This document shows, piece after piece, positions 15,356-16,831 of a DNA stretch of 39,577 nucleotides. How positions within the stretch are numbered: the stretch's first letter is position 1; each line of letters starts with the position of its first letter. The notes beneath the pieces are model-generated. The model had not been told where the DNA came from, ran no database searches, and worked only from the letters and a program-made list of their open reading frames with translations. Location: the sequence record NC_010152.1. One strand, given 5' to 3'. A program made the position numbers and the translations under genes.

Positions 15356-15658
15356 TTACACCGTTATCATTATCATTTCCTTTAAAAATCTGTTGAGGGT
15401 AGTCCCTCTCTTTTTCAGCTCTAGTTTGACTAGTATCTCATTCCTTTTCTCCAGTTTGCAGTTTATCCTATAGTATTTTTTCCCGTTGACGATAATGTAG
15501 CTTCCTTCCAAATCCTGTCTCTTATAGTCTCTAGTTCTGTCCTCAATCCCAAAGTACTCCTTCAATATTTTCCTAATTACTGCCGGTACACTAGTACCTT
15601 CTTCTTTTGCTTTCTTCTTCAGAAATTCGTAAACTTCTTCTTCTACTGTTACCATCAT
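15356..15658 (-). CDS. avtR: AvtR transcription regulator (two RHH motifs, 100 aa)
   Basis: MVTVEEEVYEFLKKKAKEEGTSVPAVIRKIL plus a second RHH; size and divergent RHH neighbour match AFV6 AvtR as I recall it. Confidence 0.85.
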   Translation of the reverse strand: MMVTVEEEVYEFLKKKAKEEGTSVPAVIRKILKEYFGIEDRTRDYKRQDLEGSYIIVNGKKYYRINCKLEKRNEILVKLELKKRGTTLNRFLKEMIMITV

Positions 15659-15743
15659 GTTACATCATGACAATTATTTGTAGTGCAATATTTAAACCTT
15701 TCTTTTAAGTTAAATTTAAAAATGTGCTATCATAAAGTTTCTT
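15659..15743. promoter_or_regulatory. Divergent promoter region between avtR and the next RHH gene
   Basis: GAAAGGTTTAAATA on the minus strand and AAATTTAAAA on the plus strand. Confidence 0.75.
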
Positions 15744-16034
15744 ATGGAGCTTGTTAAGATTTCCGTAAGGTTTAATCAAAAGTTGAAACTTATTTTTGAT
15801 AACATAAAACCACGAGATAAGACTAACGACGGGTTTTTGCGTGAGCTTTTTAACGAATGTAGTGACGTCGTCGAGAAGGTGAGTTACGATCTAGGTGAGA
15901 ATTTGAGACCATATTGCCTGAGGTTGTCTCCAGAACTAGTAAAGAGTCTTGACGGTCTAGGCGAGAAGCTAGGTCTGTCTAGGTCAGAAGTCATACGCCG
16001 ATTGATTTATGCGAGGGCGAAGAAATTGTGCTAA
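15744..16034 (+). CDS. Double RHH regulator (96 aa)
   Basis: YCLRLSPELVKSLDGLGEKLGLSRSEVIRRLI. Confidence 0.85.
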   Translation: MELVKISVRFNQKLKLIFDNIKPRDKTNDGFLRELFNECSDVVEKVSYDLGENLRPYCLRLSPELVKSLDGLGEKLGLSRSEVIRRLIYARAKKLC

Positions 16035-16421
16035 TTGCACAGGTGGTGAAGCCTGGGTTCTACATTGACTATAAGGTGAGGAGCCTTGAAGACATCCCCT
16101 GGTACTTCGTCCACTTCGTCAAGACAATCGGAGAAGAGAAGTACGGAACAAACAATATGTGTTACATTATCCTTCGATTACGACGAGTGGAGCCACCCAA
16201 TCTTCGTGGAGGGGACTATTTGCGAACCATTACAGGAGGGGAGAGAGAAGGAGCAGGTGAGGGAAATGGTAGAAGAGCTGGAGGATCAGATCCTGGATTT
16301 GTTTGGAGTGCAAATTCTTCCCTTGTTAACAGACGAGGGGATTTGGTATGGTGGTGCTCCCGGGAGAAGGATTATATGGTACCATCGTTATCCTTCGGAC
16401 GGGAGGGAGTATACGTGGTAG
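16028..16421 (+). pseudogene. Apparently frameshifted ~130-aa gene (frame 0 to ~16148, then +1 frame to TAG 16421), or read as part of ORF267
   Basis: The +1 frame (QTICVTLSFDY...EMVEELEDQILDLFG...) is protein-like, while frame 0 over the same DNA is G/R-rich. The TAG overlaps the next GTG. Confidence 0.5.
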
Positions 16422-16831
16422 ATGCTAGACAAGTTGTAAAACTAGACGTGGATGTGGATGTGGCGTGGTATGATCCCAACTGGCTTCTGGAGAAGAAATT
16501 GTCGCTCTTGCACGCCCTAGGCTACAGAGAGGAGAAAGCCTGGTGGGAGTTGTCACCCTCGGGGAGACATGTTCACTTGATAATTGTCCTTCCGAGTCCT
16601 CTCTCCACGAAGGAGCTCTTTGATCTTCAATTCCTGTTGGGCGACGATCCAAAGCGAGTTGAATTTAATTACCTGCGTTACAGCGCCATAGGGGAAGATG
16701 CTGTTCATTTTAATGTTCTCTATGCGTATAAGAAGTCCTTAACACGTGTTGATAAACTGAGGGCGATTTTCCGGCATTGGGCAAGATCTCTGCAATATTC
16801 GAAGAAGCGTAATGATGGACAAATGACGTAA
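16415..16831 (+). CDS. AEP (primase/polymerase)-like catalytic domain protein (138 aa; C-terminal part of ORF 16028-16831)
   Basis: GGAGG SD 8 nt before GTG 16415; KLDVDVD, SPSGRHVHLII and LGDD.KR motifs. Confidence 0.6.
   Translation: MVDARQVVKLDVDVDVAWYDPNWLLEKKLSLLHALGYREEKAWWELSPSGRHVHLIIVLPSPLSTKELFDLQFLLGDDPKRVEFNYLRYSAIGEDAVHFNVLYAYKKSLTRVDKLRAIFRHWARSLQYSKKRNDGQMT

What the first reader, a model, noticed from the sequence alone, without database searches (positions are those of the whole stretch)
16415..16831. Minimal AEP-like primase domain in a virus with no recognised polymerase or primase
Seen in sequence: hhhDhD (KLDVDVD), SxSGxxhH (SPSGRHVH) and a third acidic motif (LGDD) in the AEP order. 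Established: these motifs form the AEP catalytic core. Inference: together with two SF2 helicases, an SSB candidate and Cas4, this would be a virus-encoded priming or restart module.
Basis: partly seen in the sequence, partly recalled or inferred. Interest (0 to 1): 0.6.

Follow-up and report, generated by a model that had tools for sequence, protein, structure and literature searches.

The report
Mini primase-like domain with nested gene
An archaeal filamentous virus (AFV6) carries a very small domain that looks like the cut-down catalytic core of an archaeal/eukaryotic-type DNA primase, and the gene that holds it also hides a second, unannotated gene read in another frame; together they may be the missing replication-priming enzyme of these viruses.

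Summary
The window is the whole genome of Acidianus filamentous virus 6.

- **Conservation.** The motifs persist across a family of at least 64 cluster representatives. Most are stand-alone proteins of 100-170 aa from archaeal viruses and metagenomes. DxD is invariant; one His, the second Asp of GDD and an Arg are at least 90% conserved.
- **Primase kinship.** Four weak but convergent lines tie motifs I-II to AEP Prim-Pol enzymes: the best PDB profile hit, a PHROG hit, a profile-profile alignment onto pRN1 D111/E113/H145, and language-model neighbours.
- **HUH Rep rival.** It fails: the first His and every Tyr vary.
- **Limits.** The domain lacks the N-terminal AEP module, its third motif is atypical, and no activity is known. 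It is AEP-derived, not a proven primase.

The middle third of ORF267a is dual-coding. A +1-frame gene (B, 16086-16421, 111 aa) is the frame conserved at protein level and folds confidently. It has a conserved SD-like site and TTG. The annotated frame there is only kept free of stops. B sits directly upstream of C homologues elsewhere too, so B and C are probably partners.

The parts
16028..16831 (+). Annotated ORF267a / gp31 (frame 0): segment A + linker + segment C
   Evidence: Annotated in NC_010152. Full-length open frame of 252-267 aa in 62 homologues.
16028..16156 (+). Segment A: conserved N-terminal 43 aa of frame 0 (MLIAQVVK.G.YID.KV...IGEEKYGT)
   Evidence: Third-codon-position diversity pattern is frame-0-like over 16028-16147. 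Conserved in SIFV3, P0128 and P0065. AF2 confidence is low.
16157..16414 (+). Frame-0 linker: G/R/S/E-rich, poorly conserved, predicted disordered, but kept free of stop codons
   Evidence: pLDDT 21-32. Zero stops seen where 5-7 are expected under synonymous resampling, P<=0.002 per genome. In B, T-ending codons occur 0 times in about 30 before AA/AG/GA codons versus 12-36% elsewhere, in 14 genomes.
16073..16079 (+). SD-like AAGGTGA upstream of the B start
   Evidence: AAGGTG is invariant in 13 genomes although it spans two frame-0 third positions. AAGGTGA is also present in SIFV3.
16086..16421 (+). Gene B: unannotated nested gene in the +1 frame, 111 aa, TTG start, TAG stop; conserved core aa 23-111
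   Evidence: Substitutions fall on frame-1 third positions over 16148-16417. 12-sequence alignment with 77% mean column identity. AF2 mean pLDDT 79, about 90 for aa 21-111. Homologues lie upstream of C in SIFV3, L022, L023 and L043.
16401..16409 (+). SD-like GGGAGGGAG upstream of the internal start of C
   Evidence: Similar GGGAGG lies 5-10 nt before the C start in L043 and L022.
16415..16831 (+). Segment C: mini AEP-like domain (138 aa). GTG 16415 overlaps the B stop (GTGGTAG).
   Evidence: Frame-0 selection resumes here. The family is mostly stand-alone proteins. The same ATGGTAA overlap is seen in L043. AF2 pLDDT 67-89 for aa 131-220.
16439..16459 (+). Motif I, KLDVDVD (D140, D142)
   Evidence: Both Asp are invariant in 47 distant members. 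They align with pRN1 D111/E113 and with the DiD of the 7NQF Prim-Pol.
16553..16576 (+). Motif II, SPSGRHVH (H183 is the conserved His)
   Evidence: H183 is at least 90% conserved and H181 is not. H183 aligns with pRN1 H145 and with GYHIW of 7NQF.
16637..16648 (+). Candidate motif III, LGDD (D207), followed by R210, N214, R217
   Evidence: G205, D207, R210, N214 and R217 are at least 90% conserved. The context is not canonical for AEP.
15744..16034 (+). gp30 (ORF96b), an RHH regulator whose 3' end overlaps the gp31 start by 7 nt; its promoter is controlled by AvtR
   Evidence: Annotation. PHROG transcriptional regulator, E 7.5e-49. AvtR acts on the gp30 promoter (PMC5569661).

Best explanation
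**The domain (inferred function).** Residues 130-267 of gp31 (segment C, 16415-16831) belong to an uncharacterised family of very small proteins, about 105-aa core, from archaeal viruses and mobile elements. The family is a cut-down derivative of the AEP (Prim-Pol clade) catalytic core. It keeps the metal-binding DxD at the end of strand 1 and the nucleotide-binding 's-G-x-(G)-x-H' hairpin. It also has a third acidic site (GDD) followed by a basic helix (R210, N214, R217). Most likely it is a metal-dependent nucleotidyl transferase that makes or extends primers, or otherwise starts DNA synthesis, on the linear AFV6 genome.

**The partner (inferred).** C probably works with protein B. B's gene lies immediately upstream of C homologues in several virus lineages. 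B may stand in for the missing N-terminal AEP module or act as a template- or initiating-nucleotide-binding subunit.

**The gene layout (shown by sequence evolution).** The locus gives up to three products from one gp30-gp31 transcript:
1. B (111 aa), from its own SD-like site plus TTG, in the +1 frame.
2. C alone (138 aa), by coupled re-initiation at GTG 16415, which overlaps the B stop.
3. The annotated 267-aa protein, in which a conserved 43-aa head (A) is tied to C by a disordered linker. The linker's codons are overprinted on gene B and are only selected to stay stop-free.

All biochemical activity, the B-C contact and the three products are inferred.
For: **Motifs and family.**
- Motifs are present and conserved.
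- The family has 64 representatives at E<=1e-3, nearly all 100-170 aa with the domain starting at residue 2-20. Members also occur in AFV1, AFV2, SBFV3 and HHIV-2.

**AEP kinship.**
- The best PDB hit of the family profile is the CRISPR-associated Prim-Pol 7NQF/7NQD, E 0.13, aligning motifs I and II.
- Member P0117 hits phrog_8643 'DNA polymerase/primase' at E 4.2e-4, over profile positions 97-144 of 179.
- hhalign of the family against a Prim-Pol reference I built (pRN1, pRN2, pDL10, pORA1, five phage prim-pols, two metagenomic) scores 29.4, P 9e-4, over 51 columns. It places DxD on pRN1 D111/E113 and the His on H145.
- In the control, 150 column-shuffled templates gave mean 10.7, maximum 16.7.
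- Named language-model neighbours are almost all AEP families: AEP-like PF24387 at 0.91; AEP-TOTE, AEP_C962R, LigD_Prim-Pol, RepB_primase and BT4734-like_N at 0.81-0.86.
- Motif spacing (I to II 41-43 aa, II to III 24 aa) is close to pRN1, which has 32-34 and 26 (my knowledge of pRN1 residues D111, E113, H145, D171).
- The predicted fold is beta-alpha-beta-beta-alpha, ferredoxin/RRM-like.

**Context.** Relatives sit just after a DEAD helicase (L024) or two genes before a DEAD helicase plus Cas4 (L021).

**Architecture.**
- The frame under selection switches.
- Stop avoidance in frame 0.
- Confident fold for B.
- Invariant SD-like site plus TTG.
- B-C synteny in SIFV3, L022, L023 and L043, with the same stop/start overlap in L043.
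- B+C complex prediction: weak support.
Against: - No single AEP test is significant on its own (E 0.13; hhalign probability 23%).
- Only motifs I-II align. The segment after motif II does not resemble the Prim-Pol motif III context.
- The N-terminal (alpha-beta)2 AEP module is absent: only about 10 residues precede motif I, and B does not resemble that module.
- In the viral library the weak rows after family members are HUH Reps, not primases.
- No Pfam or NCBIfam hit.
- No expression or activity data; no RNA runs.
- Most contexts of distant members are uninformative.
Confidence: 0.55

Rival explanations
1. C is an HUH-type rolling-circle Rep nickase, the lipothrixviral counterpart of the rudiviral Rep (SIRV1 ORF119). 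It would nick near the genome ends and prime synthesis from the freed 3'-OH.
For: - Lipothrixviral members carry H-x-H followed by hydrophobic residues (HVHLII).
- The fold is RRM-like, as in Reps.
- BFVD Foldseek gives weak hits to Reps, including a rudiviral one (E 0.027, probability 0.51), and to PDB 9pqf Rep (E 0.07).
- The sister family Rudiviridae uses such a Rep.
Against: - The first His (H181) is not conserved in the wider family; most members read G-x-H.
- No Tyr is conserved: Y215, Y218, Y232 and Y234 all vary.
- hhalign against a six-sequence rudiviral Rep profile scores 16.1, P 0.05, over 19 columns. That is barely above the maximum of shuffled templates (15.4), versus 29.4 for Prim-Pol.
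Confidence: 0.08
2. C is a non-catalytic descendant of the AEP/Rep RRM-like fold. It would be a DNA- or origin-binding or regulatory domain, like the papillomavirus/SV40 origin-binding domains or ACT-like ligand sensors, with no polymerase activity. It might mark the replication origin or termini, or recruit host primase.
For: - The domain lacks the N-terminal AEP module.
- It has a conserved basic helix (R210, N214, R217).
- Its operon partner gp30 is an RHH DNA binder under AvtR control.
Against: Invariant DxD, plus a near-invariant His and Asp kept across 19-47% identity, is the signature of a metal/nucleotide site rather than a binding surface.
Confidence: 0.2
3. Architecture rival: A, B and C are joined into one polypeptide by programmed +1 and then -1 ribosomal frameshifts, or A-B by a single +1 shift. 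On this view there is no nested independent gene.
For: - The frame under selection switches 0 to +1 to 0 at fixed places in all genomes.
- The B stop coincides with the start of C.
Against: - Frame 0 is actively kept open across B, which obligatory shifting would not need.
- No slippery heptamer or stop/rare-codon shift site is conserved at either junction.
- An SD-like site plus TTG is conserved for B.
- In SIFV3 the B frame runs about 12 codons past the start of C, to K138 of motif I.
- In L022, L043 and L021, B and C are ordinary separate genes.
Confidence: 0.1

Closest known systems
AEP Prim-Pol clade: pRN1 ORF904 prim-pol domain and the Marinitoga CRISPR-associated Prim-Pol (PDB 7NQF)
   Same: - A hydrophobic strand ending in DxD.
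- About 35-40 residues later, an s-G-x-G-x-H hairpin followed by hydrophobic residues.
- A further acidic residue about 25 residues on.
- Profile alignments put these on the catalytic residues.
   Different: - The core is about 105 aa instead of 180-250 aa.
- No N-terminal (alpha-beta)2 module.
- No 'hDh..G.Yhh.PPS' motif III, and no zinc or helix-bundle domain.
- The similarity is sub-significant.
- There is a possible separate partner protein, B.
Pfam PF24387 'AEP-like' (small bacterial 'primase 1D family' proteins of about 127 aa)
   Same: Similar size. It is the closest named language-model neighbour (score 0.91, 172 of 256 features shared).
   Different: No Pfam hit is recorded for any of about 150 family members. 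The link rests on embeddings only; I could not align the two families.
Rudiviral Rep, SIRV1 ORF119 (PDB 2X3G), an HUH endonuclease
   Same: A small (about 120 aa) stand-alone RRM-like protein of a sister virus family, with a His-containing strand. It has a presumed role in starting replication of a linear genome.
   Different: The family lacks a conserved second His and any conserved Tyr. The profile match is at noise level.
Nested overlapping genes (overprinting) in small viruses, e.g. phiX174 and many RNA viruses (from my own knowledge)
   Same: Two frames of one DNA stretch are both used. One product is folded and conserved; the other is disordered and fast-evolving.
   Different: - Here the disordered frame is the linker of a fusion protein that bridges two conserved segments across an older gene.
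- The layout occurs in a 40-kb archaeal dsDNA virus.
- It is conserved throughout a virus family.

Membership tests
AEP (archaeo-eukaryotic primase) superfamily | Motif I, hhhDhD/E, on a beta-strand | tested here: met
   VVKLDVD. D140 and D142 are invariant in 47 distant members. The AF2 model has a strand at 136-141.
AEP (archaeo-eukaryotic primase) superfamily | Motif II, sxH (sGxGxH), with a nucleotide-binding His | tested here: met
   SPSGRHVH. H183 is at least 90% conserved. The family consensus S..G.H aligns with pRN1 H145 and with GYHIW of 7NQF.
AEP (archaeo-eukaryotic primase) superfamily | Motif III, hD/E, on a strand next to motif I that completes the metal site | tested here: inconclusive
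   D207 of LGDD is at least 90% conserved and at pRN1-like spacing. But it lies in a predicted helix-loop-helix, not the Prim-Pol context.
AEP (archaeo-eukaryotic primase) superfamily | N-terminal (alpha-beta)2 module preceding the RRM-like unit (PMC4538821) | tested here: not met
   - Only about 10 residues precede motif I in C.
- Stand-alone relatives start 2-20 residues before motif I.
- A and the frame-0 linker are not confidently folded.
- B has a different topology and no AEP match.
AEP (archaeo-eukaryotic primase) superfamily | RRM-like (ferredoxin-like) catalytic unit | tested here: met
AEP (archaeo-eukaryotic primase) superfamily | Statistically significant sequence or profile similarity to known AEPs | tested here: inconclusive
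   - PDB profile hit E 0.13.
- PHROG 8643 at E 4.2e-4, for one member only.
- hhalign P 9e-4, probability 23%, but far above shuffled templates.
- No Pfam or NCBIfam hit.
AEP (archaeo-eukaryotic primase) superfamily | De novo primer synthesis or polymerase activity | not testable with these tools
   Needs biochemistry.
HUH rolling-circle Rep endonucleases | HUH motif: two His separated by a hydrophobic residue | tested here: not met
   HxH is present only in the lipothrixviral subgroup. H181 is replaced by G, Y or other residues in most of the family.
HUH rolling-circle Rep endonucleases | Catalytic Tyr (YxxK / YxxxY) downstream of HUH | tested here: not met
   No Tyr is conserved. Y232 and Y234 become F and R in SIFV3. 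Y215 and Y218 vary across the family.
Overlapping (nested) protein-coding genes | Both frames carry signs of selection for translation | tested here: met
   Frame +1 shows third-position substitution bias and 77% mean column identity. Frame 0 shows zero stops where 5-7 are expected, with specific avoidance of T-ending codons before AA/AG/GA.
Overlapping (nested) protein-coding genes | Independent start signal for the inner gene | tested here: met
   AAGGTG(A) plus TTG is invariant in 13 genomes and present in SIFV3. L022 has an ATG.
Overlapping (nested) protein-coding genes | Both products detected | not testable with these tools
   No RNA runs hold this sequence, and no proteomics is at hand.

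The most novel reading that the evidence does not exclude
Lipothrixviruses and many other archaeal viruses encode the smallest known AEP-type primase, with a catalytic core of about 105 aa. It works as a two-protein enzyme with the previously unseen protein B. In lipothrixviruses a third product is made by fusing a conserved head to the catalytic domain, through a linker whose codons are overprinted on the partner's gene. That would be a new route to domain fusion and a rare, family-wide nested gene in an archaeal dsDNA virus.
Probability: 0.3. Interest if true: 0.8.

Novelty: new variant of a known kind. Interest (0 to 1): 0.62.

Why it matters
How lipothrixviruses copy their linear genomes is unknown. 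Their annotation lists helicases and a Cas4-like nuclease but no polymerase, primase or Rep.

A conserved AEP-derived mini-domain gives a concrete, testable candidate for the initiation step. It is present in several lipothrixvirus genera and in haloarchaeal viruses (AFV1, AFV2, SBFV3, HHIV-2). It would also show how far the AEP core can be reduced.

Separately, the nested gene B means that gp31 is mis-annotated in every sequenced betalipothrixvirus. That is a clean natural case of dual coding in an archaeal virus. It matters for annotation, for proteomics and for any knock-out design at this locus.

Tried and rejected
**Searches that gave nothing decisive.**
- Single-sequence PDB search with ORF267a: nothing.
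- NCBIfam for C, B and ORF267a: nothing meaningful.
- PDB Foldseek and VIA-align for C: only generic ACT/RRM matches, with a weak Rep and a weak LigD row.
- pRN1 prim-pol and SIRV2 Rep as single sequences against the family profile: only the His strand aligned.
- Searching the large protein set with the pRN1 domain found only 2 proteins, because of the length window.
- The genome search with phrog_8643 gave no usable loci.
- Only DNA metagenome runs hold the sequence and none is RNA.
- Literature searches for a lipothrixviral primase, and for 'primase 1D', found nothing relevant.
- Contexts of three distant members were uninformative. My translation of the ORF upstream in L042 was out of frame and is disregarded. 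One row (L023) was also mis-framed and is disregarded.

**Readings considered and rejected or downgraded.**
- HUH Rep and programmed double frameshifting: see rivals.
- Sequencing error as the cause of the frame switch: excluded, because 13+ independent genomes share it.
- B as the missing AEP N-terminal module: no structural support.

**B + C complex prediction: weak support.**
- Score 0.34, the median of runs 0.38, 0.34 and 0.01. The best of 3 controls scored 0.00.
- The mark was reached by 58 of 80 solved complexes and 2 of 110 mismatched pairs.
- At 0.60 or under it was reached by only 7 of those 80 solved complexes, and by both mismatches that passed.
- The runs agree in at least 12% of contacts, and the partner's pLDDT is at least 69.
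- I treat this as weak support only.

Full report
**What the window is.** The 39,577-bp window is the complete genome of Acidianus filamentous virus 6 (Betalipothrixvirus pozzuoliense, NC_010152). The finding lies in the C-terminal half of annotated ORF267a/gp31 (16028-16831, + strand). Its start overlaps the 3' end of gp30, an RHH regulator, by 7 nt. AvtR (gp29) controls the gp30 promoter (PMC5569661). gp31 is therefore probably co-transcribed under AvtR control; that step is my inference.

**Check of the observation.**
- KLDVDVD (nt 16439-16459), SPSGRHVH (16553-16576) and LGDD (16637-16648) are present, in frame and in that order.
- ORF267a has full-length homologues in all betalipothrixviruses and in 62 protein clusters from hot-spring metagenomes.
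- A profile of the C-terminal 143 aa, searched against 1.84 billion representatives, found 64 proteins at E<=1e-3.
- Almost all of these are stand-alone proteins of 100-170 aa in which the domain begins at residue 2-20. The domain is therefore an autonomous, truly minimal unit.
- In an alignment of 47 such proteins (19-47% identity to AFV6) the two Asp of DxD are invariant. H183, Q201, G205, D207, R210, N214 and R217 are at least 90% conserved.
- Foldseek against viral models adds AFV1 ORF144, AFV2 ORF116, a Beppu filamentous virus protein and a Haloarcula virus protein.

Sequence-profile evidence is more specific, though each item is weak:
- The best PDB hit of the family profile is the CRISPR-associated Prim-Pol of Marinitoga (7NQF/7NQD). 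E is 0.13, and the alignment covers exactly DiD and GYHIW.
- Family member P0117 matches PHROG 8643 'DNA polymerase/primase' at E 4.2e-4, over that profile's positions 97-144.
- I built a Prim-Pol reference from pRN1, pRN2, pDL10, pORA1, five phage prim-pols and two metagenomic proteins.
- hhalign of the family against this reference scores 29.4 (P 9e-4, 51 columns). It places the family's DxD on pRN1 D111/E113 and its His on H145.
- As a control, 150 column-shuffled templates gave 10.7 +/- 1.8 (maximum 16.7) and the reversed template gave 12.3.
- Language-model neighbours with a Pfam name are nearly all AEP families.

Against membership:
- Only about 10 residues precede motif I, so the N-terminal (alpha-beta)2 module that defines the AEP core (PMC4538821) is missing.
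- The stretch after motif II does not resemble the Prim-Pol motif III region.
- No curated family (Pfam, NCBIfam) hits any member.

I therefore call it an AEP-derived mini-domain, not a demonstrated primase.

**The HUH rival.** Lipothrixviral members read HVHLII, and the sister family Rudiviridae uses a small HUH Rep. However, the first His is not conserved in the wider family and no Tyr is conserved. hhalign against a six-sequence rudiviral Rep profile scores 16.1 (P 0.05, 19 columns), against a shuffled maximum of 15.4. I reject this reading.

**The unexpected part: a nested gene.** Three-frame translation of seven, then thirteen, virus genomes shows the following.
- The middle of ORF267a (about aa 44-129) is poorly conserved in the annotated frame.
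- The +1 frame of the same DNA encodes a well-conserved protein that ends at a stop exactly where conservation of the annotated frame resumes.
- Nucleotide diversity by codon position confirms it. The frame under purifying selection is 0 for 16028-16147, +1 for 16148-16417, and 0 again from 16418.
- The +1 ORF (B, 16086-16421, 111 aa) has 77% mean column identity over 12 genomes.
- B folds with pLDDT about 90 for residues 21-111 from only 12 sequences. The frame-0 translation of the same DNA is modelled as disorder, pLDDT 21-32.
- B has its own start signals: AAGGTG(A) and a TTG 6 nt downstream. These are invariant in all 13 genomes, although they occupy frame-0 third positions, and they recur in the distant SIFV3.

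Frame 0 is nevertheless kept open:
- Re-drawing synonymous codons for B predicts 5-7 frame-0 stops, with P(open) <= 0.002 per genome. None occurs in 13 genomes or in any of 62 protein homologues.
- In each genome, T-ending B codons are absent (0 of about 30) before codons starting AA, AG or GA. Elsewhere they make up 12-36%.

Both frames are therefore used. B is a real gene, and the annotated frame acts as a stop-free linker joining a conserved 43-aa head (A) to C. The same layout exists in SIFV3, in L022 (P0128, 275 aa), in L023 and in P0065.

**B and C are an old pair.**
- In L022, B and C were called as adjacent genes with a GTGA overlap.
- In L043, a distant contig, a 149-aa protein matches the B profile (hhalign P 1.8e-5, probability 78%).
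- That protein ends in ...W-stop, overlapping the start of a stand-alone C homologue as ATGGTAA. This is the geometry of AFV6 GTGGTAG.
- In L021 a weaker B-like ORF (P 0.01) precedes a stand-alone C, followed by a DEAD helicase and Cas4.
- Codon 130 or 131 of gp31 is always ATG or GTG, and a GGGAGG-type SD-like site precedes it.
- A complex prediction for B+C gave only weak support. The score was 0.34 against a best control of 0.00; the calibration counts are given under Tried and rejected.

**Why I do not favour programmed frameshifting.**
- No slippery site is conserved at either junction.
- Obligatory shifting would not require frame 0 to stay open.
- In SIFV3 the B frame runs about 12 codons past the start of C, to K138 of motif I.

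My tests support its 'two genes hidden in ORF267' half, not the recoding half.

**Context.** The AFV6 annotation has two helicases (ORF593, ORF564), a Cas4-like ORF203 and DNA-binding proteins, but no polymerase, primase or Rep. These genes are 3-13 kb from gp31, so there is no physical module in AFV6. A C homologue directly follows a DEAD helicase in L024, and one lies near a helicase plus Cas4 in L021. Other contexts are arrays of unknown small genes.

**Verdict.**
The domain is a conserved, minimal, AEP-derived candidate catalytic domain. My odds are about 0.65 for AEP descent and about 0.35-0.4 for real priming activity.
- The locus is also a family-wide dual-coding gene with an unannotated partner gene B, at about 0.9.
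- I found no paper describing either feature in the searchable library. Subscription journals are not covered, so prior description cannot be excluded.

Noticed in passing
P0126 (metagenomic protein, 349 aa): A C-family domain (aa about 215-300) is fused behind a LAGLIDADG homing-endonuclease-like N-terminal half (phrog_11023, E 0.012).
   Followed up: partly
P0091, P0117, P0108, P0124, P0126: Several stand-alone family members carry a CxxC pair just after the domain. This may be a remnant or half of a zinc-binding element, as found next to many primases.
   Followed up: no
L020:2163-2872 (SIFV3, OP999015): The depositors annotated two overlapping ORFs here (ORF13 and ORF14). They correspond to B and to a truncated frame-0 ORF. 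The full frame-0 ORF is 261 aa (2087-2872).
   Followed up: yes
L024:4202-6363: A 120-aa C homologue overlaps the 3' end of a 605-aa DEAD/ResIII helicase gene by 19 nt, suggesting translational coupling of a helicase with the mini-domain.
   Followed up: partly
window 15356-16034: gp29 (AvtR) and gp30 (RHH) are divergently arranged. gp30's last codons overlap the GTG start of gp31, so the whole gp30-B-gp31 unit is probably under the published AvtR switch.
   Followed up: partly
P0137-P0146: In several metagenomic betalipothrixvirus contigs, gene callers predicted C alone (131-144 aa, 64-75% identical) instead of the 267-aa ORF. This shows how unstable annotation of this locus is.
   Followed up: no
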